DNA of 64,000 nt from contig OZ296652.1 in assembly GCA_965655095.1 (NCBI GenBank), positions 73,408,001-73,472,000 of the forward strand, in the 5' to 3' direction. The DNA is from Haplodiscus bocki (taxonomy: Eukaryota). The translations under genes and the position numbers were made by a program. Of the stretch, positions 4,611 to 60,801 are shown one piece after another (the stretch's first letter is position 1; every line of letters starts with the position of its first letter). The notes beneath the pieces were generated by a model, which saw only the letters and a list, made by a program, of their open reading frames with translations, made no database searches and was not told the origin of the DNA.

Positions 4611-5639
4611 CACAAGAATCAGTTTTTTATTCACAATATCAAGCTATTGAAATATTATAGCGTTTCTGGATAAGTTTAGAAGGGTTAACTGAGTTGTTTT
4701 CACTCGTTATCAGAAGTATTCGCAGTTTCGCGGCCTTTTTAAAGGCATTTTACTTAGCCGAATTGTTAATTGTTTTTCCGTTGGCTCAAGTGTTGCGAAG
4801 CACAGCTCGATGCACAAATATTGCTAAACCTGTATATGATTTCGACTTCAGCCATTTTCCAAATTAGTTTTTTCTGAGAAGACTCCTCTCATTTGTTTTC
4901 TTTCATGGCTAAGCCGGTGGCTTTCGGTATGTTTTTTTTGGTAGCACTAAATAGAGATTCCGTTCAGTTTCGAAGAATTACAGCTGAAATTTTTCATATT
5001 TAGATTGCTTTAACTTCATAATTTTCTCCGCTCCAATAACATGGGAACTCGTTTTCTGCCGATGTTCCCATTCCTTCTCTTCAACGAGGCACTGTAATCT
5101 TTCCATCTACGGCTCAATCGAAAACTTGTAGATTGAATTTATCGGGACAGGTTTGAAGTTTTGTTTGGAGCAGGTTTTGAAATTTTGTTCTGTTTCCAAT
5201 CAACGGCATTATCGGGACTTCTCCGTTAGCCGGTGTACTGCTAGCTTTTTTGCAAATATTGATTTTTATTTCAAGAATTTATGGCCGAGAAATTTTTCAG
5301 GCTTATGTTGTCGAATATCCTCAACTTTCAAATTGTTTTGCTCATCTACCCACCCAATTTTTTTCATTTGGGGCTCTCTCAGAACGATTTTATGTGTGGA
5401 TTGATTTAATCAAAACCCACTTGTTTTTTGGTTTAAGAATAACCTTTTCAATTTGATATCAAACAATTGTTGGAACCTATTGTCAAACCATCAGTTGTCC
5501 AGTAAAAAGTTACTTCGGTCTTATGAAAAGCATTTTTGCCTGGAACGGTTTTACTCGTTTTTTGTTTGACGGTTGCTTGTACGAAGTTTTGCTTTTCTTC
5601 CGAAACGCCGATCTTCGTGCGACGTTAGAACTTTTGAAA

Positions 5640-6350
5640 ACTTTAAAACGGAGGGTACAGGGGGACCGTCATAGTAGCGGTGAAAGCGCAAAATTTTTGC
5701 CTCCGTGTCAATATACTCATTGTGGAGAAAACTTTGGATTTTTGTTCGTTCTCTTTGTGGGTAAGAGTTGTAAGGTAATGGAAGGAACATGTGCAACAGC
5801 ATAGAATCGGTTCACTGGGCAGATTGAAAAAACAGAAGTGTCTCATAGTTCTCGGAAGATGTTCATTCTATGGAACACTAGTAACGGAAGTTACCAGTGA
5901 AGTTCAATTAATCAAGTTTTCAATCGCTATCCGGGTTTTGTATCGAGAAAGGGCCTGGCGTTTCCCAAGCTTTTCGAACGAAAGGAATTTTTTTTGAATG
6001 TTGTGACTTCGCTCCAACTTTGATACAAGGGGCGTGGACGGCGGAGTTAAATGGGCTATCGTTTTCAATTTTTGTACAGGGTGTTGGCTGGAAAAAACCG
6101 TGGGCTTCCCAAGGCAGTGATAATGAAGTGAAAGGCAGACGTTTTGAAAGCATCAAGGTTATTTCAGCTTGGGTACAAAGTTTAGAGAGGAGACGGAAAG
6201 TAGTGGAATTAAACAAATTGGAGATTCTTCTTTTTTGGTATAAGGCTTAGGGAGTATAGTGAAACGAGTAGGAAGTGCAGGTGATGTTGAAGTTTTCAAA
6301 TGTTTTCAACTCCAATCGGGTTTAGAATTAGTGCAAGGGTGTGGGTATAG
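5640..6350. repeat. Dispersed diverged repeat, related to ~15200-15770 and partly to ~3375-3460
   Basis: Shared blocks: atccggg...aagggcctggc (5929 / 15512); gttgaagt...caaa...tttcaa.tccaat (6286 / 15705); gctgcgta.gagtacag...gtgagag (3379 / 15208). Confidence 0.5.
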
Positions 6351-6851
6351 CTCAAACTATGTAGGCTCTCGCATATCTACGGGTCTCCCAGTGCAGGTCA
6401 GCACCTGCCGCGGGCTGACGAGAACCAGCAACCCCCTTTTTGAAGTGTGACTTTCATGCTTCTATCTGAGCGTCTCAATCATCTGCGTTTGTGAGGTATG
6501 ACAGTCCTATTTTTCTTTTTCGGAAGGAACAATTTTTTTGAATTGAGCCCCCAAGAAGAGGCCTACAGGAATGAAATTCAAACATTGCGGTTAAAACGGA
6601 CTGCATCAATCCCCATGTTGTGGTGCAGTTTAGTAAAGGAGTCAATAAAACAGATGATGTTTTTAAAGCTCGACTTGAAAGTCAGCGGTGATGTAGTTGT
6701 TTTCCCAAACTTTCTTAGTCTCCCAGTGACCTTTTGTTTGAGGCTCCGACTAATAAACTTATGGTGATCGTTCACACCAAACGCTTTACGAATCTTAAGG
6801 CTGACTTTCCTTCTCGTTGCGTTTTTGAGCGGCACTGTGCAAGGCAATATT

Positions 6852-8143
6852 AGCATATAAGAACGGACACTTTTCGCCAATTTTTCATGAGTTTTTCTGA
6901 CAGAATATTGATTCTCGATAAACGATCAGTTAGTGTTAAATCTAACAGGGCAAATGTGTGCGCATCAGATGATCCCGTATCCCGTCCTCTCCCAGACTCT
7001 CGTTTATATTCAACGTTTAGTTTCTTTATGTTTCATCTTACTTCTTTTTTTATCTGTTTTGATTACCTCCTTGTTGAAAATACTGGTAATAGGTTTACCC
7101 TTTCCTGGTTGTGGGAACGCACGTAGTCTCAAAATCTTGGAACATATTCGAATTGGTACTAGGGTTAGGGAGCGAGGGCTAAGCAGTAGAAGTGGACAGC
7201 AGAGAAAACTCCGCTTTTTATCTTGAAATTAAAAGAGTATACAGAAAAGCAAGCTGTTTGAAATTATAGCATGTTTTTTAAGAACTACTAAATCTTTCTC
7301 CTTTTTCCGAGATATTGAATTTTCAATCTGTACAAGGCGATTTAATGATGTGTCAAAGTTTTCGGTTTCGGAGTGGCTTATCACGCTTAACGAATAAAGC
7401 AGGCATGATCATCATGAGGCGATAACCGAAAACATAATTGCTGAGTTGAATCTCACGTTTTTTTGGATCGCTATTTTCACTTGCTTGTTTCTTTTCTTTG
7501 TTAATGACGTCTGAAAAATTGTATTTGCTCCGGAAAGGCCGAGACATTGTTTTATGCCTCCATTATCGCAGGGATTTTTCCTCTGATTTTAAAGTACTAT
7601 CCAGAAACTGAGGTTACCAGTTTTCTTCGCGACTTGAACAGAGAACGCCAGGTTATCAAAAATTCTAGCTGTCTCAAGCTAGAATTGAGGTTCTACAGTC
7701 ACTTCTGGAGACTACCATGATTCTGCTGAATTTAGGGGAGAGTTTTGTGAACTTTCAAACGATGGAGAGAAATAATTATGCATGTATTCTTCCTGAGTTT
7801 TATTCAGGGCCTTTGCATGATACCGAAATGGCACTAAGAAGTGAGCACCTCGTCATTTAGAAGTTCTGACATTCCATAAGTGACTGGAACTAAGATGGTC
7901 ATGCTCGAGAGAAAATTTGTCTGACATTCGTTCGAATCAGCCCTGACTACAGTAACTGCTTTTCAGGTTTTTCATGGCTCAGTTGAAGGAACTCAGAGCT
8001 TTCGTTGTTGGGTGGACTGGTGCTTGTGGTGAAGCGCTTGTCAAAGAACTTGCGGCGCGCGATGTATTCAAAGAAGTGCTTCTGCTCGGCCGTCGCAAAG
8101 TGGAATTCCCTGCTGACGATGCGCGTTCAAAATTCAAACAGGT
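6852..8143 (+). repeat. 1292-bp near-identical direct duplication, copy 1 (upstream region plus exon 1 of HTATIP2-a)
   Basis: Matches 20474-21765 at a constant offset of 13622; about three substitutions seen by eye. Confidence 0.97.
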
Positions 8144-11100
8144 GGGCGTTTGCATGTTTGAATTGTAAGCATACGTGAGAATTAAAAGATCTAACTGAGA
8201 AGTTCGGCTTTTTGGGGATGAAACGGAAGCTTATGCTTTTCGCTCTTTTATTGCAGTGACTGTTATGAGCACATTTTGTTACGGTTTGATTATAGAAGTG
8301 AACTACAATCTCAGCATGGCTGCGAAATTTTCCGTCGACTGTGGGTAAGCAATTTCTCTGAAATGGAATGGCTGAATCAAAAACATAGGCACCCTAGTGT
8401 GCGAAGGGGCAGCTCTTGGCACAATAAGTACAGTAAAAGTACACGAACGAGCAACCAAATGGAAATGTATTATGGACGGCTTTCATTTACAAATCGCATA
8501 GTTTTCAAGTGCTCATTCGCGCTTGCTTATCTGGAAAACGTACGGAATTGCTGATGTGAACAATGATCGTCACTAGCCATTCGTAATATATTTGAATGGG
8601 AACAGTAGATTTGCTAATCTGGCGCAAAAATCGTCATACTACCGCTGAAATCGAAGCCGATTTTCAAAGTTACTCTTCAACCCTGGCCCACCGGCGAAGT
8701 CTCGGAATGCCGAAATTATCAATCGTTTTTTTTCAGATAATTATTCTGGAAAGTAAATTGAATTCATTGAGAATGTAAACAACTTGGTTTCAAGTCGAAA
8801 TTTTCTAAACATCAAGTTTTGTCTTACTTTTGTGGTAATGAATTTTTTTCTGCCGTGTCGCGTTTTTACTCAAGACATTGGTCAGATTGAGTTCAGCTAT
8901 TCCTAGTCTGGATCACAATAATTTTTTCGTTAGAGCGAAGCCCTCTGGAGCCGCAGCGAGAAGCTGTTTCTTACACTTGTTGCGAAAAACTTCTAGTTGG
9001 AAAATCAAACTTGTTTTTTTTTCTGCTTTCGTCGTTCCTTGAAAGTGTTCTTCTGATTGAGTATTTGTCGGATTTTGTCCCGGTTGCCCTTTTTCAACTG
9101 TTGGCATCCTGGATGATCCGGACTTTACCGAGGATTATTTTTTTACTTTTGTTGCTATTTATCGTGATATTTTTTGAAAATGAGTATTCTCAATTTGCAT
9201 TTCGTCAAGTCAGGTTGTCTTGAAAAGTTGTCGAATTAACTTCGCCCATCGATAACCAGGAGGCTGATAAATTGCGAGGATCTTTTTAGTTGCAGGGTTG
9301 GTCTGTCTTTTTTATCCGGAGACTTATCAATTTGTAGCCGACAAAAATTGTTACCTTGGCGACTAGTGGTGGCAACCAACTCTGTTTCAACTACCTGCTC
9401 ACTGGAGCTTCTTTATGATAGCTTTTTTGCGATTTTTTTTCAAAATTTCTTGACTGTTAAATGGAAAGTCAAACAAGAGGGCCAGGCAAACTGCGATTTT
9501 TTCCTTCAAGGGGTTTTACAAATGATTAGTTGAACATATTTGTGGTTGTCCATTGAGTCCTTGTCGGACGAATTCAAGCCTAGATTTTTCTTTTTGATTC
9601 TTCATTTAGTAGTTTCCTGTTATGAATACTTTATGATGAAAGTTTTTTACATGTGCGCTAGCAATTTTATACCGCAGAAGAGCTTCAAAAGATTATCACT
9701 TCAAATATCGACAAAATAACAAAAACAGTTGCTTTTTTGACATGATAACTCTGTTGATTGTGCAAAAATTAAAGAACTTCAAATCGAAGACCCATCTACA
9801 GATGAAAAACTACTACTTAATACCTTGATGAAACAAGTGACGCCATTAGTTGTCGAGAAATGAGAATTTGAATACAATGTTATGTCAAAAGTCCTATCAT
9901 TTTTGGCATCTTCGGACTATCAGAATTTCTATGCAAATGTCAAGATCCATCATTTTTCTTTTCAATTGTCTTCCTCAAGTGAAGAGGTGTTGCCTGAGTC
10001 GAGTCCTTGATGGTCCTTGATGAAACTATTCAAGCTTGAATTAGTGCGGGAAAATGAGTTCGGAAACCTAGATATAATTATTTTTTTGCTAATATTTTGG
10101 TATTTTCGGCCGGTCAGGAATTGGAAACCTATCGAAAAATTTCTGACTCCAACTAAAACATAGTGTCTGATACACTAGAGTGTCCTTTTTTTGTTACGTT
10201 TTTTGACTTGTAGTTTTTGTATAAATAGTTCATCATTAACTGTATTACAATTGCATGAGCAGTGTTATGTTGCAGAAGAGCTTTGGAAAACTATGAGTTT
10301 GAATGTCGATAAAATAGCCATATGAATTGAACTTTCCGTCATTGAGCAAAGCATTGAAATTTTGTTCATGAGATATCTGAAAAAATGTTATGTTTTTTCA
10401 CCTTTTTGGTCTATCAACATTCGGAGCCAAAGATGATTTTTCGTCATTTTCCTCGAGAATAATATTCCTTAAGTAATGAGGTGCTGTTTGAGCCTTTGAT
10501 GGAAGAATTTTAGCTCGTAGTTATAGAGGAAACTGATTTCGAAAACCTAGAAGTAATTAACATTTTCGGCTTTTTCTGCTGGTCAGGAATCGGCAAAGAA
10601 GAAACATACGCACTAAATTCTCAGTGCTGGGCTCCTGGTAGCAGGTTCCCAAAAAATTAATGAAAAAGTGCCATCTCTTTTTTTGGTGAAACGTGGATGC
10701 TTCACGGATTGACATAAATCTACGCTTTTCGAAACTATGCAAATTGGATCGATTTTGATGTTTCTCGGAGTAAACTTATCAAAATAAATCATAGTGCAGT
10801 TGAAACGTAGTGTGTGATACACTGGAACGTCTTTGTTTTTGCACAGCCAAATTGGCGTTTTTTCCAGTCCTCGATCCAAGGATATTGGAATACAGATTCT
10901 CAAAACTTTCGAACGGCCAATAAGGTCCGATTTGGAATTTTTTTCGAAAAGAATGTTTTGAAAAACATCCGGACCCAAGTATAAGGGGCCAAAATTTGAA
11001 GCCTCCTTGTTGCTTTAATCCCTATTTCTCGTAGTTTTAAAAGTTAGCTGAACCAAAATGATGAAAATTGCTAAAAATAAATAGCTCGATTACCACGTTC

Positions 11101-13874
11101 TTTCGCCAAAAAAATCTATCGAAAACATTTCTTACCTCAACCAGAAATTATAAGATGAAAGACTGAAGTGTTATTGTTATGCCAATGGAGGTTCTGGGCA
11201 CTTTACAGGCTGATCTTTTGGGACATAGAGTTACAATTGACGAAAAAGTATTAACATGGCTGGATTCTCAAGTTTCTTTCGCTGAAAAGCTTGTCGGAAA
11301 ATTATGTAATCTGTGGCAGCAGCCAAACCGTAGCAGACAATACACTGACATATTACAATATCCCTGTGGAAAAAATGGGTTTGTTCTGGAATTGCTTCCC
11401 GTTGATAAGACGGAAAATATATAAAAAAAACTTTCATTTTTTTAAGCAGAAAAAACTTAACGGAAAAGATTGAGACTGAAACGAAAACTACCATCTGGTG
11501 AATTGGAGTCTTTGCTTGCAGCTAAATTGATACAAAGTTCGAGTGAAATGAAGTTTTAGGTGCCAAAACTTCGAAATGAATCATTTTTTGTCGGAAAACC
11601 AAATTTGGTTCGATTTTCAAGATTCTTTAGCATAAAAGCCCAACGAAAATTTTTTCTCAACAGCCGAACATTAGTAGGTTGAAATTTTGACTTTTTCCTA
11701 CATCATGGCCAGCTAAAGGTTTTTTTAGATTGCGTTCCAATACAGAGGACTTACATTTGACGGAATTTGTTGAATGTGATAGCAAGAAAACTTTGTCACC
11801 GCAATTAAAAGTAAGTATATGATTGAGTTTTCCGGTGAAGGTGTTCAAAATTAAATTAATTCGAAAAACTAGCTGCCGAAAGAAGTTATGAATGTCCCAA
11901 GAATGTTCGAAATACCGAAAAACCTGGTTTTTCGAATTTTTTTTTGCAGAAAACAGATCAATAAATTGTCGGACCGCTGCCAAATATTAGTTTGTGATAG
12001 AACATTCTCCCCTTCAAACTTGTACCTAATTGAAGCATTTTGGGTTCTTGAGGGGTTCAATGAACGGCCTTTAAAATGACGAATTCGGTCAATTTGGCTA
12101 AAATTAACTCGGTTTTTATTGCAAAGAAACATATCGACAACACGTCGGACCGCAACCAAAGAATGTCGGTTTTTCGGGAAAGTTTCGGCAGGGTTTTCTA
12201 GCATGCATTTTTTTTGTCCGGAAAGTCACTTTGGAACGAAAGTTTCTTTTTCAAAAAAAGGAAGTTTAGTTTTTTAATTCTTTCTGACCTTAACCCAAAA
12301 AATTTTTCGGATTCAGCAAAAAATTTTTTGACTCAAGCGAAAGTTTTTGGTTGGGGTTGTCAAAACTGCATTCTACGACTTAACAGGAAGCTTTTGACAT
12401 GTAAAAAGACTTGAACTTGTCTACTCCGAGTTGGCAACTTCTGAAAAAAATTCTACGTACTGAAAGAATGATTTTCTTTCCGCAATATATTACGACGGAA
12501 AACAACAGGTTTTGTTCTTTTCGTCTGCCGACTGCTTTCGTTGGATTGCGCACTATCAGCGCTACTGTCCATACTAGTGGAATACCAGCTAACTTTAGTC
12601 CCTGTTGAATTCCAGAGTTTGCCTAATTGTCGAGGAGAGTGCGAAAAGCTTTTCAAAATATTTGAAATTGTAAAAAGACGTCTAAACATGGTTTCCCTGC
12701 GCAGCAACTTGAATGTTTTTCTCTAGACAACTTGTAATTAGACTGCCTGCATTCCGCATTTCTTCTTTTAATCTGAGCTTACAAGTTTAGCATAGGGGGA
12801 GGGTTGATATTTTTCAAATACTTGTTGCGATAATTATAAAAGTTTAACTACAAAATGAAGGTTTTTTTCGTAATGGTTTGTCATCAAAATTTGTTTCACA
12901 AGAATTTATTGATTGAGTTGAGTCAAATCACTGCTTTTTTTAACGCTCTCTCATTCATTACCTGCTACTTTCTGAGCAGTGGAGTAGCAGGAAGTGGCTG
13001 TTTTTTACCTTTGTTTGCGGAATATTTTCACCCGTAATTCGAGAATCCAAAATTCGAGTGTGAGTTTTTCGTGATGGTTTCTTTGAAAAATATGTCATTG
13101 AAGACTACTTGTTCGACGCAATGGGATTTTTTGATCAATTCGACCAATTCATCTTTTTTTTCGGCGCAAATCCGTGTTATATGTTCGCTCTTTCCAGTTT
13201 TTCACTATTCCCAATTCTTTGCGCTGCTTACATTGCATCGTGGATGCCAATGTTTCAGTATGCTATTTTTTTGGAGCTTAATGAACAGCATGGTTACTTC
13301 TTATATTTTGAAAAATGAAAGATCAAATAAATCAGATCGTTTATGATTTTAGGAAATAGTTGATTTTGAAGACTTGTCGAAATCCAAGGAACTGTTTGCA
13401 GGATGTGATGTTGGATATTGTGCAATTGGTTGCTCGGTGAATGAAAGTGAGAAAGATCTCTATCTGAAAGTTGATTATGAATACACTATGAGTGTTGCGA
13501 AATTTGCGAAGGAAGAAGGATGTAAGCAGTACCTTTTGATATCTGCAATGGGTGCCTCTACTAGTAACATTTTTTACCTGAAAATCAAAGGAAAGGTAGA
13601 CGCTGAAGTGGCACATCTTGGATTCGATCAATGTTTCATTTACCGGCCTGGTTTGATTCTGCGTGGGGATAGAAGCCGAGTTGTGGAAAAAGTTTATGGG
13701 TGCTTCATAAAACCGGTAACTGTTTTCAAGCCTGAATGGGGACAAGTTTCAGTTGAAGTACTGACGAAATCTATTTTGAAAAAAACTGAATTCTTTGGCA
13801 CTGAGTTGAGCGATAAAGTGACTGTCCTCGAAAATGCAGATATCCATAAAGTGTCCAAGGAACTCACAGCTTAA
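7974..13874 (+). CDS. HTATIP2: Oxidoreductase HTATIP2/TIP30-like SDR protein, paralogue a; exons 7974-8141 and 13353-13874, 229 aa
   Basis: Rossmann GxxGxxG (VVGWTGACG), LLGRRK, VDFEDL, KVDYEY, SDR YxxxK (YLKIK), IYRPGLIL, LENADIH. Phase-0 intron CAG|GTGGGC ... ttttag|GAA keeps frame. Confidence 0.92.
9580..10600. repeat. Diverged tandem duplication (~500-600 bp period) in the HTATIP2-a intron
   Basis: gcagaagagctt...tcga.aaaata at ~9673 and ~10272; aaacctaga...ggtcaggaat at ~10064 and ~10543. Confidence 0.45.
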
Positions 13875-16800
13875 TAAGTGATTTTTTTTCAAGTTCTGCA
13901 ACGCTGTGACAAAACTTGTGAGTTGCGTGTTTCTTAAATACTGTTTGTCGTATTTTGTCCATCCTGTGCTAATTCAAAGTCCTATCCAGCGCCGCCAACT
14001 CAAACTCCAGAGGCTGCAAAGAACCGGGATTTCCAATCTGTGTTTAGTGCTAGGTTTTTTATCCTGCAACTGGAAAGTCAATGATGTTTTTACTTGCCTG
14101 TTCGTTGATAGAGGTCTCGTTGAAGACTTGAGTCACATTGTGTCCTTCTGACGCTAGTTCGGCTACTCGCTGCCTAGAGTAACTAAAAGTTGAAAATATT
14201 TTTGAAAAAAACCCTGGGAATTGCTCGATTGGCAAAAAAACTTTAATGAATGTTCACTTACTGTCAGCTGGTATTGGTATGTTAGGAAGTTTTTTTCTAT
14301 CACAATTCGAACTGTTAAAAGAAACGTTTTTTCATCTGTGGATGCTCTAACATGTTTGTGTTCGCATTGATCTAATAATTATGACGTGCAGCGTTGCGAA
14401 GCTCGGCTTTGCCTTCTAGGTTACTCTCACGATGGCAAATATATTGTAATTGGGACAATTGTTCACAATTCCGACCGTGAATTGCTGGAAACTTCTGTGA
14501 TTTTTTGACCGTCTTCATAGAACAGGGTTTGCTCACACTGCATCATTCAGTCCTATATATTTTGAATTCAACTCCGTGCATCAATAGGATGCACAAGTTA
14601 TCACACGGAAGAGTTTCGAAATTATAAAACTCCGAACCAGAGTTCGAACTCGCAATCAAAGGCTCAAGATTCGCTCATAGTATTCACATTCAATTCGATC
14701 TTTGACGAGTTGAATTATGCTGACGTTCAATTAGTTGATTAAACACAGTGCTTAATTGAATAGTAAGTGAGCTGACCAGAGCAGCCAATTTCTCAAGGCA
14801 CGACAGTTCTCAGGGAAAACAGCAAGAGTAAAAGTTTCTGCGATTTTTCATAAGATTCTTGTGTGTGTTTTTTTCAAACTTGCGCAACTCATTAAGTCAT
14901 GACAACCCTGATTTTGGTCATTTTCGGCCAATTTTGATTTTTTCAAAAATCTCACCTCCAACAGACTCAGAAAAAATTTCAATACCAGTATTTGGCCATC
15001 TCGCCTAAAACATTTGATTTTTCCAATTTTTACGACTGCGGGAAATTTTATTAGGACTTCGGAAGTTTTCATTTGACGCTGTACTGATAATGTTACTCGG
15101 TTTTCGATTTTTTTTTTACGTTTTTTCTTACGACATCTTGTGACGTCGCTCGAAATCAGGAATTCCGTCCGATCATTGAAAAATTTCATTTTTTAAAACG
15201 CAGCAAGGCTGCGTAGGAGTACAGAAAAACCAGACGTACCATTTTGGTAGCGGTGAGAGTGAGCAAATAAGAAAAATGGAATTTTTTTCTTGCTCCCCAA
15301 GTGATACTTCAACATAGGTTAGACCTTTCAATCTTTTGAATTCTTTTCATGCAATTTGCGGTAAAAGAGAATAAGGGTCAATGAGGAACTCTATGCAACA
15401 GCGGAACCTTGAAAAACGAAAAGTCGATTTCATCTGAAGTGATGCATTCTAAGGATCACCAGTATTGATAGTGACCGTGGGAGTTGAGGGGGTTTGAAGC
15501 TTTGAATTTTAATCCGGGGTGGTATCAGAGCAAGGGCCTGGCCTTTCTCAGGTTCTGGGAAATGAGGGAATTGAAAGATTTTCCATATCCATTCCTAGGC
15601 AGTGGGACCGAGAGGATTGACAAATTTTTGAAAACATTATGTTTTTCTGCTTTGGGTACAGGGCTTAGAGGGACGATAGTGAAAGTGTGGGAATAACCGG
15701 GGAAGTTGAAGTGGTCAAAGTTTTTCAATTCCAATTCGTGTTAGTATCCGGTCCAAGGCGTGGCTTTTTTCTAGGTTTGGCAACGGCTGCAATGATTAAA
15801 ATTGGGAAAAAAATTAACCTTGTTCTAACTTGGGTGCATGGAACAGGGAGGGTATTGTAAGTGTTTCGAGTGCTCCATGTATGCGAAATGGGAATCAATT
15901 TTCAGTTATACTACGGGGTAGTATCCGAGAATGTTGCAGCTATTTTGAGCCGCTAGAAATCCGGAGATTCTTAAAAAGTTTGTATGAGGTTTTTATTCGA
16001 ACTTTGAGAGTTGATTAGGTAGTTTGAGCCGAATATTGAGAGTGGCGGGCGGACTTACGGTTAGAAGTAATCACCATGGTTATTGAACAATAAATTGCTT
16101 TTTAATTTGGACAAGACTTTGCACAATAATCTGTTGACCAGTGGAGGTCGCTCCTCTATTTTTCATTACGGTATCTTTCAACTGAATTCGAAATGTCAAG
16201 CATTATAAACAGTCGCATTTCTAACAGCCTCGCTGTTCAGATCCGCCCGGAAGGACGAGAGATCCTATTCTGAATTGGGATTTTTGCTTCTTCAACTTGA
16301 GCTAAATCGTCTTCCTTCGTAAGATATGACCGTTCAGATATGACCAACTTGAGGTTCATTTCATCCAATGAGTTGTTAAAAAGGGAGACAAATTTTTGAA
16401 TTTAACAATGCTAATCTTTCGTGCTCCCAAAATGGTTATTCTTTTTTGGGATCGAGAGATCGAGATGAAAAAGCTTTTGAAGTTGTTTTGACGTCTTGTT
16501 GACTAATGTTGGTCATTTGGAAAGCTAGAATTTTTAAATACAACATGTTTTAGGACTTCTATTATGGTTCTTTTTGGCGTTGATAAGTCATTGAAACACG
16601 GCGCTGCGAAACGGCGATTTCAAAAGACATGAATAACAGATCAACTTTTGTACCATTAGGCACCGAAAGTTGTTGTCTTTTTTCGACTTATTCGAGCAAC
16701 TTTTTATTGCACATCTGGTGTTGTTTTGTTCAAAGTGTCAATCATGTATACGATCAGAATTTGGTGTCTCTCAGGACCTTTAATCTGTCAACTATATTTG

Positions 16801-18389
16801 ATTTCAACTTACAAATCCGAATTTGTTGCGAAGTTCAGCTTCGCCTCTATGTCATGAGTTTCTCCTTGAAAATAAAGATTTATGGTAATCAATGGTAGGT
16901 CCTGCAAGCACCCCTCTGCGTAAAGGTCTTTTAAATGGTTTTCCCCACGAAATTTCTGGAGTCGTATCATTTTTGAAAAATCTTTTTTGGAGTGGTTGAC
17001 GCTCGAGAAGTGAAATCGCGAAACTTTATCTTAATGCGTGTAAGTTGGCTTTTCGGCTCCTAAAAAACGGAAACATCATTTGTCCGTCAGTTCTTTAAAA
17101 CGAAAGAATTTGACAAAAAATTCAATGCCTTGCCTTCGGAGTATTTTTGGAGGACCTAATTATGAAATCCATAAAGTATTTCGATTTAACCACGCAAAAA
17201 ATGGACATGAAGAAATGGTTGGAAGTTCCTGACATGGGAGTCTCAAAAGCCTCGATTGTTCCTCCGATTTTCATCTATTCAAAATTTCTAGTATGTTATC
17301 GAATTTCTAAGAAAATTTTTTTCTTCTAGACTTCATTCTAAATTTCTTAGCTTTTGATTTTGATTTTTTGGGCTTCAAGAACGCAATTGTTCGCCCAGGG
17401 GCTGACTTGATTAAATTCAATACTGTGTTTAATCAACCGTTAGTCTGTTTCAACTGCCAAAGATCGAACTGATTGTGAATAGTATATGTGACTCTTGCGA
17501 CTCTGATTGCAAGTCCGAACTCTGGTTCCGAAACTTCCGTGCGAAACTTCCGTGTGATAATTTGTAACGCAAATGTTTTCGTGTAGTACCTGGGTTGGTG
17601 TATTTCAGAATCTTCTTTCCCCCTGAGAGTTGGCATAGTTTTTTGTAAAATACTTTGTAGAATACTTGATCAATTATGTGATAAATGTGCCCAATATGTA
17701 AATATATTGAATTTTCTTTTTGCTACTGTTGACACATTCTGATGAATTTGAAATGTAATTATCTCTTTCATACGCTAATTGACTTCTGACAGTATCCAGC
17801 ATTGTCTCGAGGTAGTCATAGTTTCTATTACTCTGGAGGTTTCTGCAGCAGTTCGGTTTTTCCTTGTTTGCAAAAATTGCAGTGGCTATTACAGAGTCTT
17901 TATTTTCACCGTCTACTGAAACTGTTCAGACTGAATTTTTGAAATTGTCAAAATATGAGCAGACAGACCACTACGGTTTGGGTTTTCAAAAGAAAATGTA
18001 TGTTCTGTTTAAAGTTTTCTTCTTACCCGCTTTTCAATATCGAACACGAAGGCGAATGAAATCATAGGTACGACGTTGACGTTTTTTTTCATACCGGACC
18101 TCGCGGGATCGGACACTTCTGCCTCACTTCAACTGACCTGACTTGTGTGCTGCAGTTGAATGACATTCTTACCATTATATATGTGCACGTATATTGTAAA
18201 ATCAGTGGGTTGAAGTTTCAGAGACGAACAGAGTTTCCATAGGCAATTTGTGCTTTCTACCGTTACATTTCTATATCATTTTTATTTGGTGCAAAACGCA
18301 AAATCTCGACACTTCTTGGTCAATTTTTTTTGATATTACGACAGGAATAATACAAAAAACTCATTGGCAACAAGATAGGTTTTTCTGAA

Positions 18390-18900
18390 GTTCAAAAATT
18401 TTTGATGGGTTTTTTGTGAGGGGAAATTGATTATCTAGTTGAATTTGCACATTTAGATTTTCTTTCTCAAATTTAAGTGCTATGTCTTCGCACCTAGGTC
18501 TCCCAAACTACCTCAATTTTGCTTAAGCAATAAAAGCAGACTTCAATCTGTGATCAGCTGAGATTAGATTTCGGCTGAGTTTCATTGGTTTTTGGGGAAA
18601 GATTGGTGAAAATTGAGGTAATTTCGACTCTTTATATTTTGGCTGTATTGAGAATCTTGTCTAATGAAAGTGTCATATACTTGTAGCGAGGTCTTCTAGT
18701 GACCTGAAGTTTTAATAGGGATTACAACCAAAATTTTTGATGGCTTCTTTCTGGGAATCGAGCTAATTTCAACTATTTTTCATAATTTTGTTAGATTTAA
18801 GTGCAATATCTTTGCACCTAGGTTTTCAAATCACTCGAAATTTGCATAAGCGTTAGAAGCAGGTTCCAATCTCTATCAACTGCTAAGATTTAATTGACGT
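18390..18900. repeat. Degenerate tandem repeat, ~325-bp unit, about two copies
   Basis: aaaatttttgatgg at ~18395 and ~18730; atttaagtgc.at.tctt.gcacctaggt at ~18471 and ~18795. Confidence 0.6.
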
Positions 18901-19499
18901 TCGGATATTTTTGTTGGGTTTTGAAAAGTCATCAAGTTCAAGTCATTTATTGGGGAAATTAGGCCTCGGTATGCTCTTTTTTTTTGTGCTAGTACAATCT
19001 ATAATCAGGGGATTTTAATGAAACTTTTATTTTTGGCTTCGCTACTCGAGCCCCATCATGGGCCTAAATTCATAAACAGAAAAACCGGTTCGGAAGACAT
19101 ACCAGGAGTGTTTGATATGTTTTGTTTAGTCAGTAAACCTTATACCAATGAGTTTCTCTTTATTTTTTTTACCACTGTGAGATGAAAATATAAATTACAA
19201 AAGAGTGATTGCTCTAGTTTTTGTTTGGAGAAGCCACTTAATTTTCCGACTAATTTTTTCAGTGGTAAGTGAAACTTACTAACATATTCCAGAAACGCAA
19301 AATTGCCTTGTAACACACTGTAAATACAGTCGTCCTGTTTCCGTTAATCGACACCAATCCACAGACTTTGGAGTGACAATCTTTGAAAACTATTTAAAAA
19401 TTTCGCGAACGCGCCATTATTCGTCGAAAGCTTCGAACGCAGAAACTCGACAGACAGAATATAATGCGCGTGAAGCAGCCTTGACGACAACTGTGGTCA

Positions 19500-19860
19500 T
19501 GATGGGCAGCATCAGCAATCGAAGGCAGCTAGAAAACTGACTTGAAAAGTTCGGTAAAGACCAAAAGTATTTTATAATTTTTCGCTTTTTTGATGAAGAC
19601 TTGCCGAGAAGGTTTCTGACAAAAATTGTCAAAACGCACTGGTCTATCAAATGGTTGGCCATCACTTAGTGCAAATGCATTAGCAATTCTAAGCTTCCTA
19701 TAAAGACAACACATAGACTTAACCTTGGACCTCTGAAAAAACTTACAAAAGTGAGCCGCTATTCACTCGCCGAAAATCATTCGGCGGCTTCAGCTTTGGG
19801 ATATGAGAGATAGTGAGCTCTTGTGTAGTGTTTATCCAAAAGTTAGAAAAATCTTGACCA
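19500..19860 (-). mobile_element. Probable decayed LINE reverse-transcriptase fragment
   Basis: Minus-strand peptides IPKLKPPNDFRRVN (like IPK..P.DYRPIS) followed by ILLVFTELFKSVF (like ..DFSKAFD); frameshifted. Confidence 0.35.
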
Positions 19861-20473
19861 ATAGATGCTGAGATGTTCAGTTTAAAGATAATAAACGCAG
19901 TGATAGTGACTGAGAGTGAAAAAACCATAAACACAGGCCTAATGCCTGAAAAAATTTGTGTCTGGTATGTCACTATAAGGCATTGGAGTTCGCAGTCAAA
20001 CGCGTGCTCTTTTAAACTGTAACTATCCAGGCAGTGAATTCGGCACCTTTGAGAAATCTCCAAAAATTGATGATAATGGGATTGTATATTTTGTCGAAGC
20101 ACTCCTTGAAAATTTATGCTCCCAACAATATTTTGAGGGTTACCGTCATCAAACGGAAGGACCCGTTTTTTGTTCAGCGCTTTTATAAGAAAGTGCTCGA
20201 TTTGTTTTCACCGCATGAAGTATTCGGGTACAAACAATGTTTTCTTTGTGCCCATTCAATTTAGGACCAGGATCCCAAAAACGAAGTATTTGCGTACGAA
20301 GCATTTTTGGGCCTTGAGCCAAATTTTCTTCGTGATACCTGCCTTCAATACAGCAAGACTTTCCTGAAAAGTCATATACCACAAATATTTGAACGAAGGA
20401 CCTTCTCAGACAGTATATTCCTTCTAAATTTTCATTTTCCGACACTGTTTAGACAAATGGGTTACTTTCTGTA

Positions 20474-21765
20474 AGCATATAAGAACGGACACTTTTCGCC
20501 AAATTTTCATGAGTTTTTCTGACAGAATATTGATTCTCGATAAACGATCAGTTAGTGTTAAATCTAACAGGGCAAATGTGTGCGCATCAGATGATCCCGT
20601 ATCCCGTCCTCTCCCTGACTCTCGTTTATATTCAACGTTTAGTTTCTTTATGTTTCATCTTACTTCTTTTTTTATCTGTTTTGATTACCTCCTTGTTGAA
20701 AATACTGGTAATAGGTTTACCCTTTCCTGGTTGTGGGAACGCACGTAGTCTCAAAATCTTGGAACATATTCGAATTGGTACTAGGGTTAGGGAGCGAGGG
20801 CTAAGCAGTAGAAGTGGACAGCAGAGAAAACTCCGCTTTTTATCTTGAAATTAAAAGAGTATACAGAAAAGCAAGCTGTTTGAAATTATAGCATGTTTTT
20901 TAAGAACTACTAAATCTTTCTCCTTTTTCCGAGATATTGAATTTTCAATCTGTACAAGGCGATTTAATGATGTGTCAAAGTTTTCGGTTTCGGAGTGGCT
21001 TATCACGCTTAACGAATAAAGCAGGCATGATCATCATGAGGCGATAACCGAAAACATAATTGCTGAGTTGAATCTCACGTTTTTTTGGATCGCTATTTTC
21101 ACTTGCTTGTTTCTTTTCTTTGTTAATGACGTCTGAAAAATTGTATTTGCTCCGGAAAGGCCGAGACATTGTTTTATGCCTCCATTATCGCAGGGATTTT
21201 TCCTCTGATTTTAAAGTACTATCCAGAAACTGAGGTTACCAGTTTTCTTCGCGACTTGAACAGAGAACGCCAGGTTATCAAAAATTCTAGCTGTCTCAAG
21301 CTAGAATTGAGGTTCTACAGTCACTTCTGGAGACTACCATGATTCTGCTGAATTTAGGGGAGAGTTTTGTGAACTTTCAAACGATGGAGAGAAATAATTA
21401 TGCATGTATTCTTCCTGAGTTTTATTCAGGGCCTTTGCATGATACCGAAATGGCACTAAGAAGTGAGCACCTCGTCATTTAGAAGTTCTGACATTCCATA
21501 AGTGACTGGAACTAAGATGGTCATGCTCGAGAGAAAATTTGTCTGACATTCGTTCGAATCAGCCCTGACTACAGTAACTGCTTTTCAGGTTTTTCATGGC
21601 TCAGTTGAAGGAACTCAGAGCTTTCGTTGTTGGGTGGACTGGTGCTTGTGGTGAAGCGCTTGTCAAAGAACTTGCGGCGCGCGATGTATTCAAAGAAGTG
21701 CTTTTGCTCGGCCGTCGCAAAGTGGAATTCCCTGCTGACGATGCGCGTTCAAAATTCAAACAGGT
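20474..21765 (+). repeat. 1292-bp near-identical direct duplication, copy 2 (upstream region plus exon 1 of HTATIP2-b)
   Basis: Matches 6852-8143; identity stops immediately after the exon 1 donor GT. Confidence 0.97.
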
Positions 21766-24700
21766 AGGACATCTCTCTTTCACTGTCTGTGCTTCACAAA
21801 AGCTGGATCTAAGGAGTCTTTGCTATTGGAAAAATTGCGTGTGTGTGTTTGGTTGGTGCATTTTAGAAGAATTGCCCGATGATCACACTAACTTTTGTTT
21901 TTAAGACCTTGAAAACGACTACATTTGACGAAAATTCTGCACTCCGAACTCCCAATTGATTATTGGTACTTTAGAAGGCCCCAATAGGCTAGAGGGTAGG
22001 ACTCAAAGATCTTCAAGCCATAGATATGGGTTGGATACTAGGAACTTGTCCCATAAAAATTCAGGAATTTTTCTCATTTTGGGTAATTCTAATTTTCAGA
22101 ATGTTTACGGTTTTGGGGTTTTAGGTTTTGTGCTTTACCGATTTTTCTGCTTTTCCGGCCTGTTGGTCCGAAGGGTTGCACAAAAATTTTTAAACCATAC
22201 ATAGGGGCTCGAGACTAGGTAATTCCTTCTTTCAAATAAACGTCTCATTTTGGTTATTTTATCCACCCATTTGTGTGATGAACCGATGGTTCGCCAAATT
22301 TTATGGTACCAAAAGAAAAGTCCCCCGTAAGAGCCAGATTTTTTCGATAAATTAACATAGCAAACAGCAAAATCCTTCAATCAGGCTTTGTCAGGCTATA
22401 AAACTACGATACATTCGTATAAATAACAACGGACCTACTTATTTTGAATGCACTAAAAGCTCAATCTTAGCTGTTGGGTTTGTTTACTTGAAGTATTCTC
22501 TATCGGCAATTGGCTGTAGTTTGAACGTGTAAGTAGTATAGGGATTTGTATGGTATGCGACGGGTCAATCCTAAGTTTCATGCACTCTTTCAACGGTTGA
22601 GAAAATCCTCGGCCACACGAGCGTAGGTTGTAAAGTAAGTTCTTATCGATGCTTTGATATCAACTGTTTGCTTGATACATTTGCGCCAGCAAGTTTTATC
22701 ACAGGCTTCTGTGGACTTTTTTCCAAACCATTCAGAACTTGAATTTGTTCCTGGGGTCTTATGTTCCTAGATGTTGTTTATGCGCTCTCGTTTTCACGGA
22801 AAAGTGATAAGCTTTCCCACAGTTGGTAAAAAATTGTTCACGTGCCAATTTCCATTGTGCACTCCCTTTTTAACTAAAAAACGAAATAACTTCCGTGGCC
22901 GTTTGCACTTATTACATTAGAAACAACCTATTTATTAAGTTCCTGTATAATTGTTCAATCAAGGGTTTTCATTGTACCGTGGCCCTCTCAATCAGTTATT
23001 CTTACTCCGTTTGTTCACTAGTATTCTGCAATACGCAGCTTCGCCCCTGTGTTGACATTACGATCTAGCTGAGGTTACCGCCACTTACACAACAAGAAAG
23101 AATCTGCTCATCACGTCCTCAGTCAGCGCACTATGTAAATCAACAAAATTATTGTTGAGGGTAACTTTGAAACAATAAGCATTCAGTCGACGCTACTACA
23201 ACAGAACTAAGGACTTGACAGAACAAATTAATTATATGGAGATAATCGCAAGTTTTGAAGATCTCGAAAACTGCTCGAAACTGGATCTCAATCTGAGGAG
23301 CTTAGATTTTTACGCGAGAAAGTATGAGATTGCGTCAGGAGACTTACGCTGAAAAAACAATTTGTCCGAAACAAACTGGTTTCAAAGAAAAATTTGGTTG
23401 TTTCAAGTAGTAAAAGGAATTCAAGTGGTAACAATCTCCCATGTTCCGAAAACAGAGTTTTGGACGGTCTAAAATCATTTTTATCAGAATCTAGTCGAAA
23501 TCAAAATGTTTCGTTCTTTATCGTTTAACCTGAAATCTGAAAAAAAATGACCAACTTGTGAAATAAAAACGTCAGACATTCACTTTGTCAAACTTCAGAT
23601 AAAACAATATAATTGACTGTAACCATGAACGGACGGCCCGAAAGGATTGGAGACATCCAGGATGAGGTGCCCGAACTAATCATCTCCGACGACGCTAGGG
23701 ATGATGCTAACGACAACCTCTCGGTGGAAACAAATACAAAATCTGTAGGTATCATCCATTTCATTACATTATCTTTTGTGAACATCTAAAGCTTTCTCTG
23801 ACAACTAAATTGGTGGAGGATATCCTTAATAGCACTGGCATGGCAACTAGTGTTGGAATTCTTGAAAGTTGTGGACTATAGCAATTGTATGGTACTCAGT
23901 GATGGATTTTTTGAAAGGTATGTAATAATACAGTACTGATCTGATGTTTGAGTAAATAACAGAAGAATTGTTAAAGGTACGGCCCTTGTGTCAACGCATC
24001 ATGGCCACCGGGAGACAGTTTCAAAAGTGGGCAAAGGCAAACGTGCTGTTACCACTATTGTTCTGAGAATAGAACCGGAACTGCGTAGGGTCGTAGTCCT
24101 TTCTTCGCGAGAAAAGTGCCTTTGCTGAAAGGTTTAAAGGGTTGTCACATAAAAGTAATCGGCAGCCAGGGATATCCTGTGACTGAACCAAAGCAATGGA
24201 CAAAGCGTTGTGTACGTTCACATTTTAATTGAGCTCTTTGATTTGGTTCCATTTGCTTCCATTTATTGTTTTTTCCCCTAACTTTTCTATACGTGAAGTT
24301 TGCGACTTTCCAGATTTCGGTAAATAAGTCATCCTCGGTGGTGCATCCCGAACCCCCTCCCACACACGTAGAGAACTTTTCGCCCTCAGGGCTCTTTTAT
24401 CTGCTGCGGTATAATCAGTGTTGTGTTAATGCTGATGTTTTGTCTTACACTGTCTCAGAAAAAAATATGGCAAAGTTTGTAACAACTATTCTCCACGGAA
24501 AACAATGTTTTAAATGACGTATGTTTCGCGATTATTTCCATATGTGTTTTTGAGCGATGTTCCTAACTGATTTTTGGGCTGCATTTCATGCGATGTTTCG
24601 GAGGAAAAAATAGTAACTTCTTTTCTGCTGCACCGATTTTGTAGCTGACTTATGGAAGCTTTTCGATTCTATTTTTTTTAAGCGAGCTTTGTTATGGTTC

Positions 24701-33700: not shown

Positions 33701-35777
33701 TTCCTCCTTTTAGTCGTTTTTGCCCAAATTTTCATTGCAATTGGCCTTCCTTCCGTTTTCCGTATTTTCCGTAGATATTCATAAGAAGGACCAAAATTTG
33801 GTAGCTTCTCTTCAATGTGTTTTTGTGGCGTATACTTTCGGTAGAAATCGCATGTCACATCTTGTGCGACCTGTCGACTATTCAATTACTTTTTTCGCAG
33901 TGCGATATTTTTTTTCGAAAAAAAAAGTTTTTGGCAGAAAAACGGGGGTTATCATTGCAAAATATGCCTTATGGCGGCTTGAAGTTTGCGAAGTAATCAG
34001 AGGCGTGCGCTTTTTTTATGTTTCTCTTAAGGTGCATCTGTTGGATTGAAGTAATGTATTGATTTGAATTCTTTCGACAATCCACCCAGAAGTACTGAAA
34101 TCGGTTTCTTTTCGTTTTGAGATTTTGGCATGAAGATTACTGTTTCGGCTTTGCAGCGAATTTTCATTTGTGTTGTTCCAAGTTATTGAATTGATTCTTG
34201 TTTGCGTTGGCAGCTTTGCGGAGCTCTTCTTCGCCTGTGTGCTAAACTTGCGTATATAGGAGTTGTATTGCAGGCTTAAGTTTCCTTTTCCGATCAGCTC
34301 GCAACTTGCATTTGTTTCAAGGTTCCAATGTTTACACATTTTGTTCATGCGCTTTGGCTTTTTTTGCAAAATTTCTCTCATGTGCTTTCGCGCAATTGTA
34401 TTTTTTTCCACATGGCCTACTTTCTATCGTGTGCGCTGGTTTTGAGTATAATGCAAGTCATCTACTATAGTCCTTCATGCTTGTTCCAGTGGTAAATGAG
34501 GGTGTTACTGAATTCATTTAATTGTCTTTAATTGCTTAATCAGTAGTTTTTGTGGTACCTTGGCGCCTTCAAAAAGTAGTTGTACTTGTTCAATTTGTTG
34601 ATTGATTTTCCGTCGGCCAATCTGCTTTCCGCAGGTTTGCGTCTGTTGATAAATGGGTGAAGAAACTTCGTGCCTCAGAAGTTTGATATTGGATTGAAGA
34701 GCAGTGAGATGACATGGTGTGAAAACATTGTTTTTAATTTTTTTCTCTGTTTTGACGAAATGTCTGTGTTTTCTACATGAAATTTAACTGGTGCCACAAG
34801 TACTTTTCACACTCCTCACCACTTCAGATAGAATGCAATGCAGTTACACCTGGCAATGCTTATATCTGGACGGAAAAGTCTTCACCGTCATTCAATCAAT
34901 TTCCTTCGTAAAATGGAGTAAATGTGTTAAAAAGTTTCTAATTGGCCACACAGATTTAATAGTAGTTGATTGTAGAATGTATTTGGATGTATTTTGATTT
35001 TCGTGAAACTCGCAAACCGAAAGCACTACGAGTTAAATATGGGAGAAACCCGACAATTGAACCCAAGAAAAAATAGTTGTGTTTGCTATTCCCATCAACG
35101 AGTACAACTGAAGTCAATATTTTAAATCTCGAAAATTTAGTTTGCCAAAAAATCGTATTAGCATTCAACCGTTGGAAAACCGCTTGAATCTCAGTATTGA
35201 CACGTTGCAGACCATACACGTCCCGATGTGGATGCGTCATTGATTGTTTTAGGAAGTGGTTGATTTCGAAGACTTGTCCAAGGCTAAAGAATTGTTCGCC
35301 GGCTGTGATGTTGGATATTGTGCGATGGGATCTGCACGAAGTGAACACGGAAAAGAAGTTTTTCTGAAAGTGGATTACGAATACACGATGAGTGTTGCAA
35401 AAATTGCGAAAGAACAGGGCTGTAAACAGTACCATCTGATATCTTCAATGAATGCCTCTACTACCAGTAAAATTTTGTACCTGAAGATCAAGGGAAAAGT
35501 GGAAGCTGAAATCGGAGAGCTTGGATTTGATCAATTTTACATCTACAGACCTGCTCTAATTTTGCGTGGAGAGAAAACCCGGGCTGTAGAGAAAGCTTAT
35601 GGATGGATGATAAAACCAGTAACTTGTTTCAAACCCGAATGGGGACAAGTGTCGATAGAAGTACTGGCGAAATCTGCGATCAAAAAATCCGAGAATTTTG
35701 GCGATGATGGAACCACTAAAGTGAATATCCTCGAAAATGCAGATATTCATAAAGTCGCCAAGGAACTAACGGTTTGA
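21596..35777 (+). CDS. HTATIP2: Oxidoreductase HTATIP2/TIP30-like SDR protein, paralogue b; exons 21596-21763 and 35253-35777, 230 aa
   Basis: Same exon 1 peptide as paralogue a; phase-0 13.5-kb intron CAG|GTAGGA ... ttttag|GAA; exon 2 has VDFEDL, KVDYEY, YLKIK, IYRPALIL. Confidence 0.92.
21984..22042 (+). mobile_element. tRNA-like SINE head, related to 57790-57855
   Basis: Shares ctagagggtaggac with the reverse complement of the 57.8-kb copy, followed by B-box-like gggttggatac. Confidence 0.3.
24550..25720. repeat. Decayed short-period minisatellite-like tract
   Basis: Many variants of (g)ggcagcattttt / gcgttt / cgatac recur throughout; the minus strand gives Lys-rich broken ORFs. Confidence 0.55.
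30300..32500 (-). mobile_element. Possible highly decayed APE-type LINE ORF2 relic inside the HTATIP2-b intron
   Basis: Minus-strand motifs in the expected order: GIT*SENWLN (~32365, like ITETWL), VLGDY (~32120, like LGDFN), LKWLW..KVKFVG (~30670), SRDHLGLRL (~30490, like QGS.LGPLL). All are weak. Confidence 0.3.
33632..33677. repeat. 18-bp tandem repeat, ~2.5 copies (cagatgttccaaRatttg)
   Basis: Directly visible in the sequence. Confidence 0.8.
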
Positions 35778-60550: not shown

Positions 60551-60801
60551 AGTTAATTGGATGATAATGAATATGGAGTGATGTTGGCTGCTTGGAAACT
60601 TAAAATTATACGCTCTACACTGCACGCATTGCTTCAGGAAAGATACTCAAGTGCTGTTTTTTGTTTGAACACACGGGATGATTTTTCTACCATTATGAAT
60701 AATTGATACATCGGTTTTTGGTTGCTGGGATTAAATATTTATTTAGACAAACTCTACTGATAAAAAATGGTGGAACATGTAACTTCGAATAAAAGCCAGC
60801 T

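What the first reader, a model, noticed from the sequence alone, without database searches (positions are those of the whole stretch)
6852..21765. TIP30 paralogues share a near-identical upstream+exon 1 block ending exactly at the splice donor, but have old, divergent second exons
Seen: 6852-8143 and 20474-21765 differ by about 3 nt in 1292, including 1.1 kb of non-coding DNA. Identity ends at CAG|GT, the introns are unrelated (5.2 vs 13.5 kb), and the exon 2 peptides differ at about 51 of 174 positions. The left edge falls at a TATA-like agcaTATAAGAA. Inference: an old tandem duplication in which one 5' module recently overwrote the other (gene conversion anchored in exon 1), giving one control region and nucleotide-binding N-terminus driving two different enzyme bodies. 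Alternative: one gene with two alternative last exons recently gained a second promoter/exon 1.
Basis: partly seen in the sequence, partly recalled or inferred. Interest (0 to 1): 0.7.

Follow-up and report, generated by a model that had tools for sequence, protein, structure and literature searches.

The report
Gene front end copied onto neighbouring paralogue
Two old neighbouring copies of a TIP30-type oxidoreductase gene in an acoel worm share a nearly identical 1.3-kb front end (upstream DNA plus first coding exon) because the upstream gene's front end was very recently copied onto the downstream gene, a clean but ordinary case of DNA repair between duplicated genes.

Summary
Window 6852-8143 and 20474-21765 are 1292 bp, ungapped, with 3 differences. 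Identity drops to random at once on both sides, and the right edge lies 2 nt past the exon-1 splice donor. The second exons are old (72% aa, dS about 0.9). A third paralogue lies on another chromosome.

New here:
- **Direction is A to B.** An old dispersed repeat runs unbroken across copy A's left edge but is cut off at copy B's. So B's left junction is non-homologous.
- **Very recent.** The block differs less between copies (0.23%) than the flanks differ between haplotypes (about 0.5%).
- **Species and splicing.** The genome carries the published Symsagittifera roscoffensis spliced leader. A TTTCAG acceptor conserved 5-7 nt before the ATG suggests the 1.1 kb upstream is outron plus promoter.
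- **Raw reads.** Public read contigs break exactly at the block edges, as a true two-copy repeat would.

Best reading (0.6): exon-1-anchored ectopic gene conversion or SDSA, closed on the left by end joining. A duplicative insertion is not excluded. No RNA data were reachable, so shared regulation is untested. This is a known kind of event, of modest interest.

The parts
6852..8143 (+). Copy A of the 1292-bp block (source copy, in its native context): 1122 nt upstream DNA, the 168-nt first coding exon and the GT of the donor
   Evidence: native context
20474..21765 (+). Copy B of the block (derived copy); differs from A at the positions matching 6881, 6994 and 8082
7974..8141 (+). First coding exon of gene A (56 aa, GWTGACG nucleotide-binding motif, donor CAG|GT); matches TIP30 residues 19-60
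21596..21763 (+). First coding exon of gene B, same peptide as A, one synonymous difference (TTG against CTG)
7961..7966 (+). TTTCAG, probable spliced-leader trans-splice acceptor 7 nt before the ATG (also at 21583-21588; TTTCAG is also 5 nt before the ATG of the old paralogue C)
   Evidence: conserved at dS above 1.5; leader present in the genome; background 1.4% of ATGs; no RNA evidence
13353..13874 (+). Exon 2 of gene A (173 aa plus stop), acceptor ttttag; matches TIP30 residues 68-181
35253..35777 (+). Exon 2 of gene B (174 aa plus stop), acceptor ttttag; 72% aa identical to exon 2a
6370..7199 (.). Old dispersed repeat R1 that runs unbroken across copy A's left edge (6852); gives the A-to-B direction
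   Evidence: copies L019, L020, L021, L023 and L024 align collinearly to A's left flank and to the block; in B only from 20476 rightwards
7314..7566 (.). Old short dispersed repeat R2 inside the block (over 40 copies at 71-82% identity), copied along with it

Best explanation
Genes A and B are old tandem paralogues of a two-exon TIP30/HTATIP2-type short-chain oxidoreductase. Very recently a 1.29-kb piece of gene A was copied onto gene B and replaced whatever B had there. The piece holds part of an old repeat, the rest of the upstream/outron DNA, the trans-splice acceptor and the whole first coding exon.

Proposed mechanism (inferred): a break upstream of B's first exon was repaired from the neighbouring paralogue. 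The broken end paired with A through the only sequence still alike, the 168-bp first exon. That is why the copied tract ends exactly where exon homology ends, at the donor. DNA synthesis then ran leftwards along A's upstream DNA for 1.1 kb. The new strand was released and joined to the other broken end without homology, which gives the blunt left junction at 20473|20474. This is ectopic gene conversion of the synthesis-dependent strand-annealing kind, with one homologous end and one end-joined end.

Consequence (inferred, untested): B now has A's N-terminal dinucleotide-binding module, A's trans-splice acceptor and A's proximal upstream DNA, joined to its own divergent enzyme body.
For: Shown:
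- The block is 1292 bp with 3 differences, sharp edges, and no residual homology in the flanks.
- Divergence is discordant: exon 1 A/B has 1 synonymous difference, exon 2 A/B has dS 0.90 and dN 0.17, and exon 1 against paralogue C has dS about 1.7-2.0.
- The right edge is the exon end plus GT. B's intron then starts GTAGGA, which is donor-like.
- Repeat R1 is continuous across A's left edge in five independent genomic copies and is truncated at B's edge. B's left flank has no match to them. So the direction is A to B and the left junction is non-homologous.
- R1 copies are 64-74% alike. R1 therefore looks younger than the A/B duplication, and the left edge is not the old duplication boundary.
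- No relic of another exon 1 exists in the window.
- B's exon 2 is intact and no more divergent from C than A's is (dN 0.278 against 0.275), so B has stayed a working gene.
- Read contigs from two samples break at the block edges.
- The flanks differ by about 0.5% between haplotypes, against 0.23% between the two block copies.

Known precedent: HBD-like globin genes acquiring HBB promoter sequence by interparalogue conversion or crossing-over (PMC4041002). Introns diverge fast and limit conversion tracts (PMC3966223).
Against: - Nothing shows that B had an exon 1 of its own at this site before the event.
- A 168-bp anchor, expected to be only about 80% identical, is a poor substrate for homologous invasion unless earlier conversions had kept the exons alike.
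- A classical conversion tract needs homology on both sides, and the left side has none.
- A 3-nt direct repeat GTA (20471-20473 and 21764-21766) could be read as a target-site or microhomology mark of an insertion, though its chance probability is about 1 in 64.
- Copy B's two junctions were not checked in raw reads.
- There are no RNA data.
Confidence: 0.6

Rival explanations
1. Duplicative insertion without any homologous anchor. A 1.29-kb piece of gene A's front end was pasted (end joining or replication template switch at both ends) into the DNA between exon 2a and exon 2b. Before that, exon 2b was an alternative last exon spliced from exon 1a, or B's own first exon was lost in the same event.
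For: The left junction is certainly non-homologous. There is no relic exon 1. A 3-nt GTA repeat flanks copy B. Partial duplications that mimic conversion are documented (PMC3966223).
Against: The right breakpoint would fall within 2 nt of a splice donor by chance, a few in thousands given a 5.2-kb intron to land in. The sequence after it in B is already donor-like (GTAGGA) and is unique DNA for 76 nt before the first repeat.
Confidence: 0.2
2. Long-standing concerted evolution. The block has been kept identical by repeated gene conversion ever since the old tandem duplication, and its left edge is the old duplication boundary.
For: Sharp conversion islands with fully diverged flanks are known (hsp16 and col-12/col-13 in C. 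elegans, PMC3966223). A repeat that is continuous in A and cut in B would also arise if the old duplication had cut inside it.
Against: Repeats R1 and R2 look about half as old as the A/B duplication: roughly 0.2 substitutions per copy against 0.45 per lineage from dS. An insertion that postdates the duplication cannot straddle the duplication's boundary. There is no gradient or patchwork of identity towards the edges.
Confidence: 0.08
3. Assembly artefact: a falsely duplicated or misplaced 1.3-kb piece.
For: Copy B's junctions were not seen directly in reads. The best runs probably come from the sample that was assembled.
Against: An artefact would not end at a splice donor. Read contigs of two samples branch exactly at 6852 and 8143. 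Copy A's flank exists as two haplotypes. Both copies lie inside one chromosome-scale contig with unique flanks.
Confidence: 0.03
4. RNA-templated copy: the free 5' exon splicing intermediate (transcript start to donor) was reverse-transcribed and inserted.
For: The right end is exactly the exon's 3' end. A possible 3-nt target duplication is present. Earlier unchecked notes report active LINEs and leader-tagged retrocopies in this genome.
Against: There is no poly(A) or LINE 3' mark and no spliced leader at the start. The block starts inside an old repeat with a TATA-like motif downstream of the supposed start. A 1.1-kb leader full of ATGs is needed.
Confidence: 0.04

Closest known systems
Interparalogue gene conversion or crossing-over that gives HBD-like beta-globin genes an HBB-like promoter and 5' part (PMC4041002); the human fetal globin HBG1/HBG2 5' conversion tract (from my own knowledge: Slightom et al. 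1980)
   Same: Tandem paralogues. The 5' flank plus the first exon(s) of one gene is replaced by the neighbour's, while the 3' body stays divergent. Regulatory reunification is expected.
   Different: In globins the non-coding DNA is still homologous on both sides, and tracts end inside introns or at simple repeats. Here the paralogues are so old that only the 168-bp exon could pair, the tract ends exactly at the donor, and the left junction is illegitimate.
Conversion islands in C. elegans paralogues (hsp16 modules, col-12/col-13; PMC3966223)
   Same: Near-identical segment with completely diverged flanks in old duplicates. The same ambiguity between conversion and recent partial duplication applies.
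   Different: Those islands cover whole ORFs with short introns. Here only the first exon and 1.1 kb of upstream DNA are covered, and the direction could be read from a straddling repeat.
Variable-first-exon clusters (UGT1A, protocadherins; PMC1885805)
   Same: Tandem exon modules combined by splicing with other exons.
   Different: The architecture is the reverse: there, many first exons share constant 3' exons. Nothing here shows that exon 1a is spliced to exon 2b.
Human TIP30/HTATIP2 (PDB 2BKA)
   Same: Exon 1 aligns to residues 19-60 and exon 2 to residues 68-181. The GxxGxxG and YxxxK motifs are kept.
   Different: Identity is only 35-45%. The gene has two exons, three paralogues and probably a trans-spliced 5' end.

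Membership tests
TIP30/HTATIP2-type atypical short-chain dehydrogenase/reductase | N-terminal dinucleotide-binding motif GxxGxxG followed by a basic beta2 end | tested here: met
   Exon 1 reads VVGWTGACGE...LLGRRK and aligns to TIP30 residues 19-60, E 1.6e-4 to 4e-5
TIP30/HTATIP2-type atypical short-chain dehydrogenase/reductase | Collinear similarity of the body to solved TIP30, including YxxxK | tested here: met
   Exon 2a residues 1-112 match 2BKA residues 68-181, E 5.7e-22; YLKIKG aligns to YLQVKG. Fish HTATIP2 hits at 37-45% identity
TIP30/HTATIP2-type atypical short-chain dehydrogenase/reductase | Pfam NAD_binding_10 above the gathering score | tested here: inconclusive
Exons were scanned apart: 23.7 and 25.0 bits against a cut-off of 27.2.
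Interlocus (ectopic) gene conversion | A segment of near-identity inside paralogues that are otherwise much more divergent | tested here: met
   0.23% in the block against dS 0.90 in exon 2
Interlocus (ectopic) gene conversion | The tract is bounded by homologous sequence on both sides | tested here: not met
   The right end is at the limit of exon homology. The left end has no homology at all and cuts an old repeat
Interlocus (ectopic) gene conversion | Non-reciprocal: the donor keeps its native context and the recipient is altered | tested here: met
   Repeat R1 is continuous across A's edge and truncated at B's
Interlocus (ectopic) gene conversion | The recipient held a homologous sequence before the event | not testable with these tools
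Spliced-leader trans-spliced gene | The species has a spliced leader, and there is an AG acceptor just before the ATG | tested here: met
   The published 32-nt leader (PMC9911081) occurs exactly over 100 times; 1641 matches within 3 mismatches, 0 in the control. TTTCAG lies 5-7 nt before the ATG in A, B and C
Spliced-leader trans-spliced gene | Transcripts that carry the leader joined at that acceptor | not testable with these tools
   No RNA run was listed
Retrocopy (RNA-mediated duplication) | Poly(A) or LINE 3' end, target-site duplication, start at a transcript 5' end | tested here: not met
   No poly(A). Only a 3-nt GTA repeat. The start lies inside an old repeat

The most novel reading that the evidence does not exclude
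The block is a reverse-transcribed copy of the free 5' exon splicing intermediate (outron plus exon 1, cut at the donor), inserted with a 3-nt target duplication in front of exon 2b. It needs no promoter of its own, because any read-through RNA can be capped by spliced-leader trans-splicing at the copied acceptor. That would be a new route to 5'-exon shuffling in trans-splicing animals.
Probability: 0.04. Interest if true: 0.8.

Novelty: new member of a known kind. Interest (0 to 1): 0.3.

Why it matters
This is a tidy natural example of how an old, functionally diverged paralogue can have its promoter-proximal DNA, its 5' processing site and its cofactor-binding N-terminus reset to those of its neighbour in one repair event. 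A short conserved exon was the only homology available. It warns that paralogue ages and expression divergence inferred from first exons or promoters can be wrong by orders of magnitude. It also gives a young, datable event for studying ectopic repair in an acoel genome. It does not reveal a new mechanism.

Tried and rejected
- **Closed or empty tools.** No RNA run was listed, so splicing, transcript starts and use of exon 1a against 1b could not be tested.
- **Independent check of the right junctions.** A search with the exon-1 read-through ORF of copy B found only C-type first exons of other assemblies.
- **Residual similarity downstream of exon 2.** The match 16388-16852 to 37881-38249 looked like a remnant of the old duplication but is a dispersed repeat.
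- **Candidate relic exon 1.** The weak hit at 22002-22049 is a chance match.
- **Other genes in the block.** Rfam, tRNA and ORF scans found no other gene in the block.
- **Transposon or gene-capture origin.** Rejected: only two copies of the block exist in 1.5 Gb.
- **Unequal crossing-over.** Rejected: it would duplicate the whole 13.6-kb unit.
- **Contig depth.** The block is about twice the flanks in X1 and X3. The tool says depth should not be used, so I give it no weight.
- **Joined protein.** The joined exon 1 plus exon 2 protein was never built or searched.
Full report
**1.
- In register, window 6852-8143 and 20474-21765 (1292 bp, no gaps) differ only at 6881, 6994 and 8082.
- The neighbouring 50-nt windows fall at once to 9-18 matches of 50 on both sides. 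Gapped local alignment of 500 or 1500 nt of either flank is no better than shuffled sequence, z below 1.
- The block holds 1122 nt of upstream DNA and a 168-nt coding exon, 7974-8141, reading MAQLKELRAFVVGWTGACGE... (56 aa, phase 0).
- Identity ends after the GT of the donor CAG|GT. After that, A reads GTGGGC and B reads GTAGGA.
- The exon's one difference is the synonymous CTG/TTG at 8082.
- The second exons are 13353-13874 (173 aa) and 35253-35777 (174 aa), both behind a ttttag acceptor. They are 71.7% identical in protein and 76.7% in DNA.
- The introns are 5,211 and 13,489 nt and unrelated.

**2. What the genes are.**
- Searched apart, exon 1 aligns to residues 19-60 and exon 2 to residues 68-181 of human TIP30/HTATIP2 (PDB 2BKA). 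The GxxGxxG and YxxxK motifs are kept.
- Fish HTATIP2 proteins match exon 2 at 37-45% identity.
- Pfam NAD_binding_10 stays just below its cut-off when the exons are scanned apart.
- The assembly (1.5 Gb) holds exactly three such genes: A and B here, and C on another chromosome (exon 1 at C4:40032893-40033060, a 1.26-kb intron, exon 2 from 40034324).

**3. Old bodies, young front end.**

Nei-Gojobori estimates:

| Comparison | dS | dN |
|---|---|---|
| Exon 2, A against B | 0.90 | 0.17 |
| Exon 2, A or B against C | above 2.5 | 0.275 (A), 0.278 (B) |
| Exon 1, A or B against C | 1.7-2.0 | 0.07 |
| Exon 1, A against B | 0.026 (one synonymous change) | 0 |

- The non-coding 1122 nt of the block differ at 2 sites.
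- The block is therefore some 400 times younger than the duplication that made A and B.
- Both second exons are intact, and B is as constrained as A.
- A protein tree groups A with B (support 80/85), with C outside. A's branch is the longer one.

**4. Direction of the copy (new).**
- A 500-nt query across copy A's left edge found dispersed relatives that cross the edge.
- I fetched seven of them. Five (L019, L020, L021, L023, L024) align collinearly both to A's left flank and to the first 350 nt or so of the block. Together they define an old repeat, R1, over about 6370-7199.
- Against copy B the same sequences align only from 20476 rightwards. B's left flank matches none of them and carries a different repeat at 20267-20418.
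- So copy A lies in its native context and copy B is the derived copy.
- B's left junction (20473|20474) is blunt and non-homologous.
- R1 copies are 64-74% alike, and the short repeat R2 inside the block (7314-7566) is 71-82% like its copies. That is roughly 0.2 substitutions per copy, against 0.45 per lineage for the A/B duplication.
- The repeats therefore look younger than the duplication. The left edge, which lies inside R1, cannot then be the old duplication boundary. This dating is rough.

**5. Raw data.**
- One lay of Logan contigs on window 5000-10999 was allowed. The runs were X1 and X3 (sample S1), X4 (sample S2) and X5 (another organism label). None is on record as RNA.
- Contigs start at 6852 (X3) and end at 8143 (X1, X3). 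Flank contigs start at 8114 in X1, X3 and X4, which is 30 nt inside the block.
- That is the branching a k=31 graph makes at the edges of a true repeat with two different continuations.
- By the tool's 31-letter rule none of these contigs bridges an edge, and copy B's own junctions lay outside the stretch. This is consistent with two copies but is not proof.
- Copy A's flanks occur as two haplotypes in sample S1: 10 substitutions and 3 indels in 1881 nt on the left, and 8 substitutions in 1618 nt on the right. That is about 0.5%, more than the 0.23% between the two block copies. The event is therefore younger than ordinary allelic coalescence.
- All contigs, including a 174-nt exon-1 contig of X5 (5 differences), read T at 8082. 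The C of copy A therefore looks derived or minor.
- Flank contigs stop at 6880, so 6881 is probably polymorphic in copy A.
- A break at 7968|7969 fits a T5/T4 length variant.
- One X4 contig fits only 6996-7998, and its other 240 letters fit nothing here. I cannot explain this.

**6. Species and 5' end.**
- Earlier notes of this scan called the genome an acoel with spliced-leader trans-splicing.
- I tested this. The 32-nt leader published for Symsagittifera roscoffensis (PMC9911081) occurs exactly more than 100 times. There are 1641 matches within 3 mismatches and none in the control.
- A, B and the old paralogue C all have TTTCAG 5-7 nt before the ATG. The rest of C's upstream DNA is unrelated. 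Only 1.4% of ATGs in the window have such a motif.
- This is most likely the trans-splice acceptor. Most of the 1.1 kb would then be outron, with the promoter at an unknown place inside or beyond the block.
- 'One control region' is therefore an inference only. The TATA-like motif at the edge lies inside repeat R1.

**7. Mechanism.**
- The right edge at the exon end is what a homology-dependent process gives when the exon is the only sequence still alike. The left edge is illegitimate.
- The best fit is repair of a break upstream of B's first exon. The broken end invades A through exon 1, synthesis runs leftwards for 1.1 kb, and end joining closes the left side. This is one-ended ectopic conversion.
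- Steps shown: recency, direction, the nature of both junctions, and the absence of a relic exon.
- Steps inferred: that B had its own exon 1, and the repair pathway itself.
- The main rival is a plain duplicative insertion, with exon 2b formerly served by exon 1a. It has to accept a breakpoint within 2 nt of a donor by chance. A GTA triplet on both sides of copy B is its only positive hint.
- Long-term concerted evolution, an assembly artefact and an RNA-templated copy are less likely, for the reasons listed under the rivals.

**8. Comparison and verdict.**
- Partial conversion that moves a promoter and 5' exons between tandem paralogues is well known (beta-globins, PMC4041002). Conversion islands with diverged flanks are known too, as is the caveat about partial duplication (PMC3966223).
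- This case is a new member of that kind. It is notable for the age gap, the exon-exact right end, the illegitimate left end and the readable direction.
- Interest is modest (0.3).

**Limits.**
- No RNA run was available.
- Only one read-laying run was allowed.

Noticed in passing
window 6996-7998 (run X4, record 19): A 1243-nt contig of the second sample fits the block only from 6996 rightwards, just past the 6994 difference. Its other 240 letters fit nothing in 5000-10999. It may be a structural variant or a shorter copied tract in that sample.
   Followed up: no
window 7968-7972 and 6881, 8082: Read contigs imply a T5/T4 length variant 2 nt before the ATG and a polymorphic 6881 in copy A. 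Only T is read at 8082 in all runs, so at least two of the three A/B differences may be segregating variants and not fixed differences.
   Followed up: partly
G000:C4:40032893-40034842 (L013, L016): Third TIP30-like paralogue with the same two-exon structure, a 1.26-kb intron and the same TTTCAG before its ATG. Near-identical and 96%-identical versions exist in other ENA contigs (P0010, P0004, P0011).
   Followed up: partly
window 20471-20473 and 21764-21766: The triplet GTA stands directly before copy B and directly after its exon. It may be microhomology or a target duplication, or chance (about 1 in 64).
   Followed up: partly
window 45715-46296, 52450-52953, 54805-55257, 60802-62880: Downstream ORFs with Pfam hits: fructosamine kinase, prenyltransferase repeat, V-SNARE/Sec20, and a 692-aa single-ORF transglutaminase. 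ORFs 44043-44678 (+) and 59780-60625 (-) have no Pfam hit.
   Followed up: no
whole genome: The 32-nt spliced leader occurs about 1640 times, scattered over all chromosomes. That is far more than a leader-gene array would need, and it fits earlier notes that retrocopies carry the leader.
   Followed up: no
window 13353-13871 against 35253-35774: In the protein tree, gene A's second exon has a branch about three times longer than gene B's (0.32 against 0.11), so the copy that donated the front end has the faster-evolving body.
   Followed up: no
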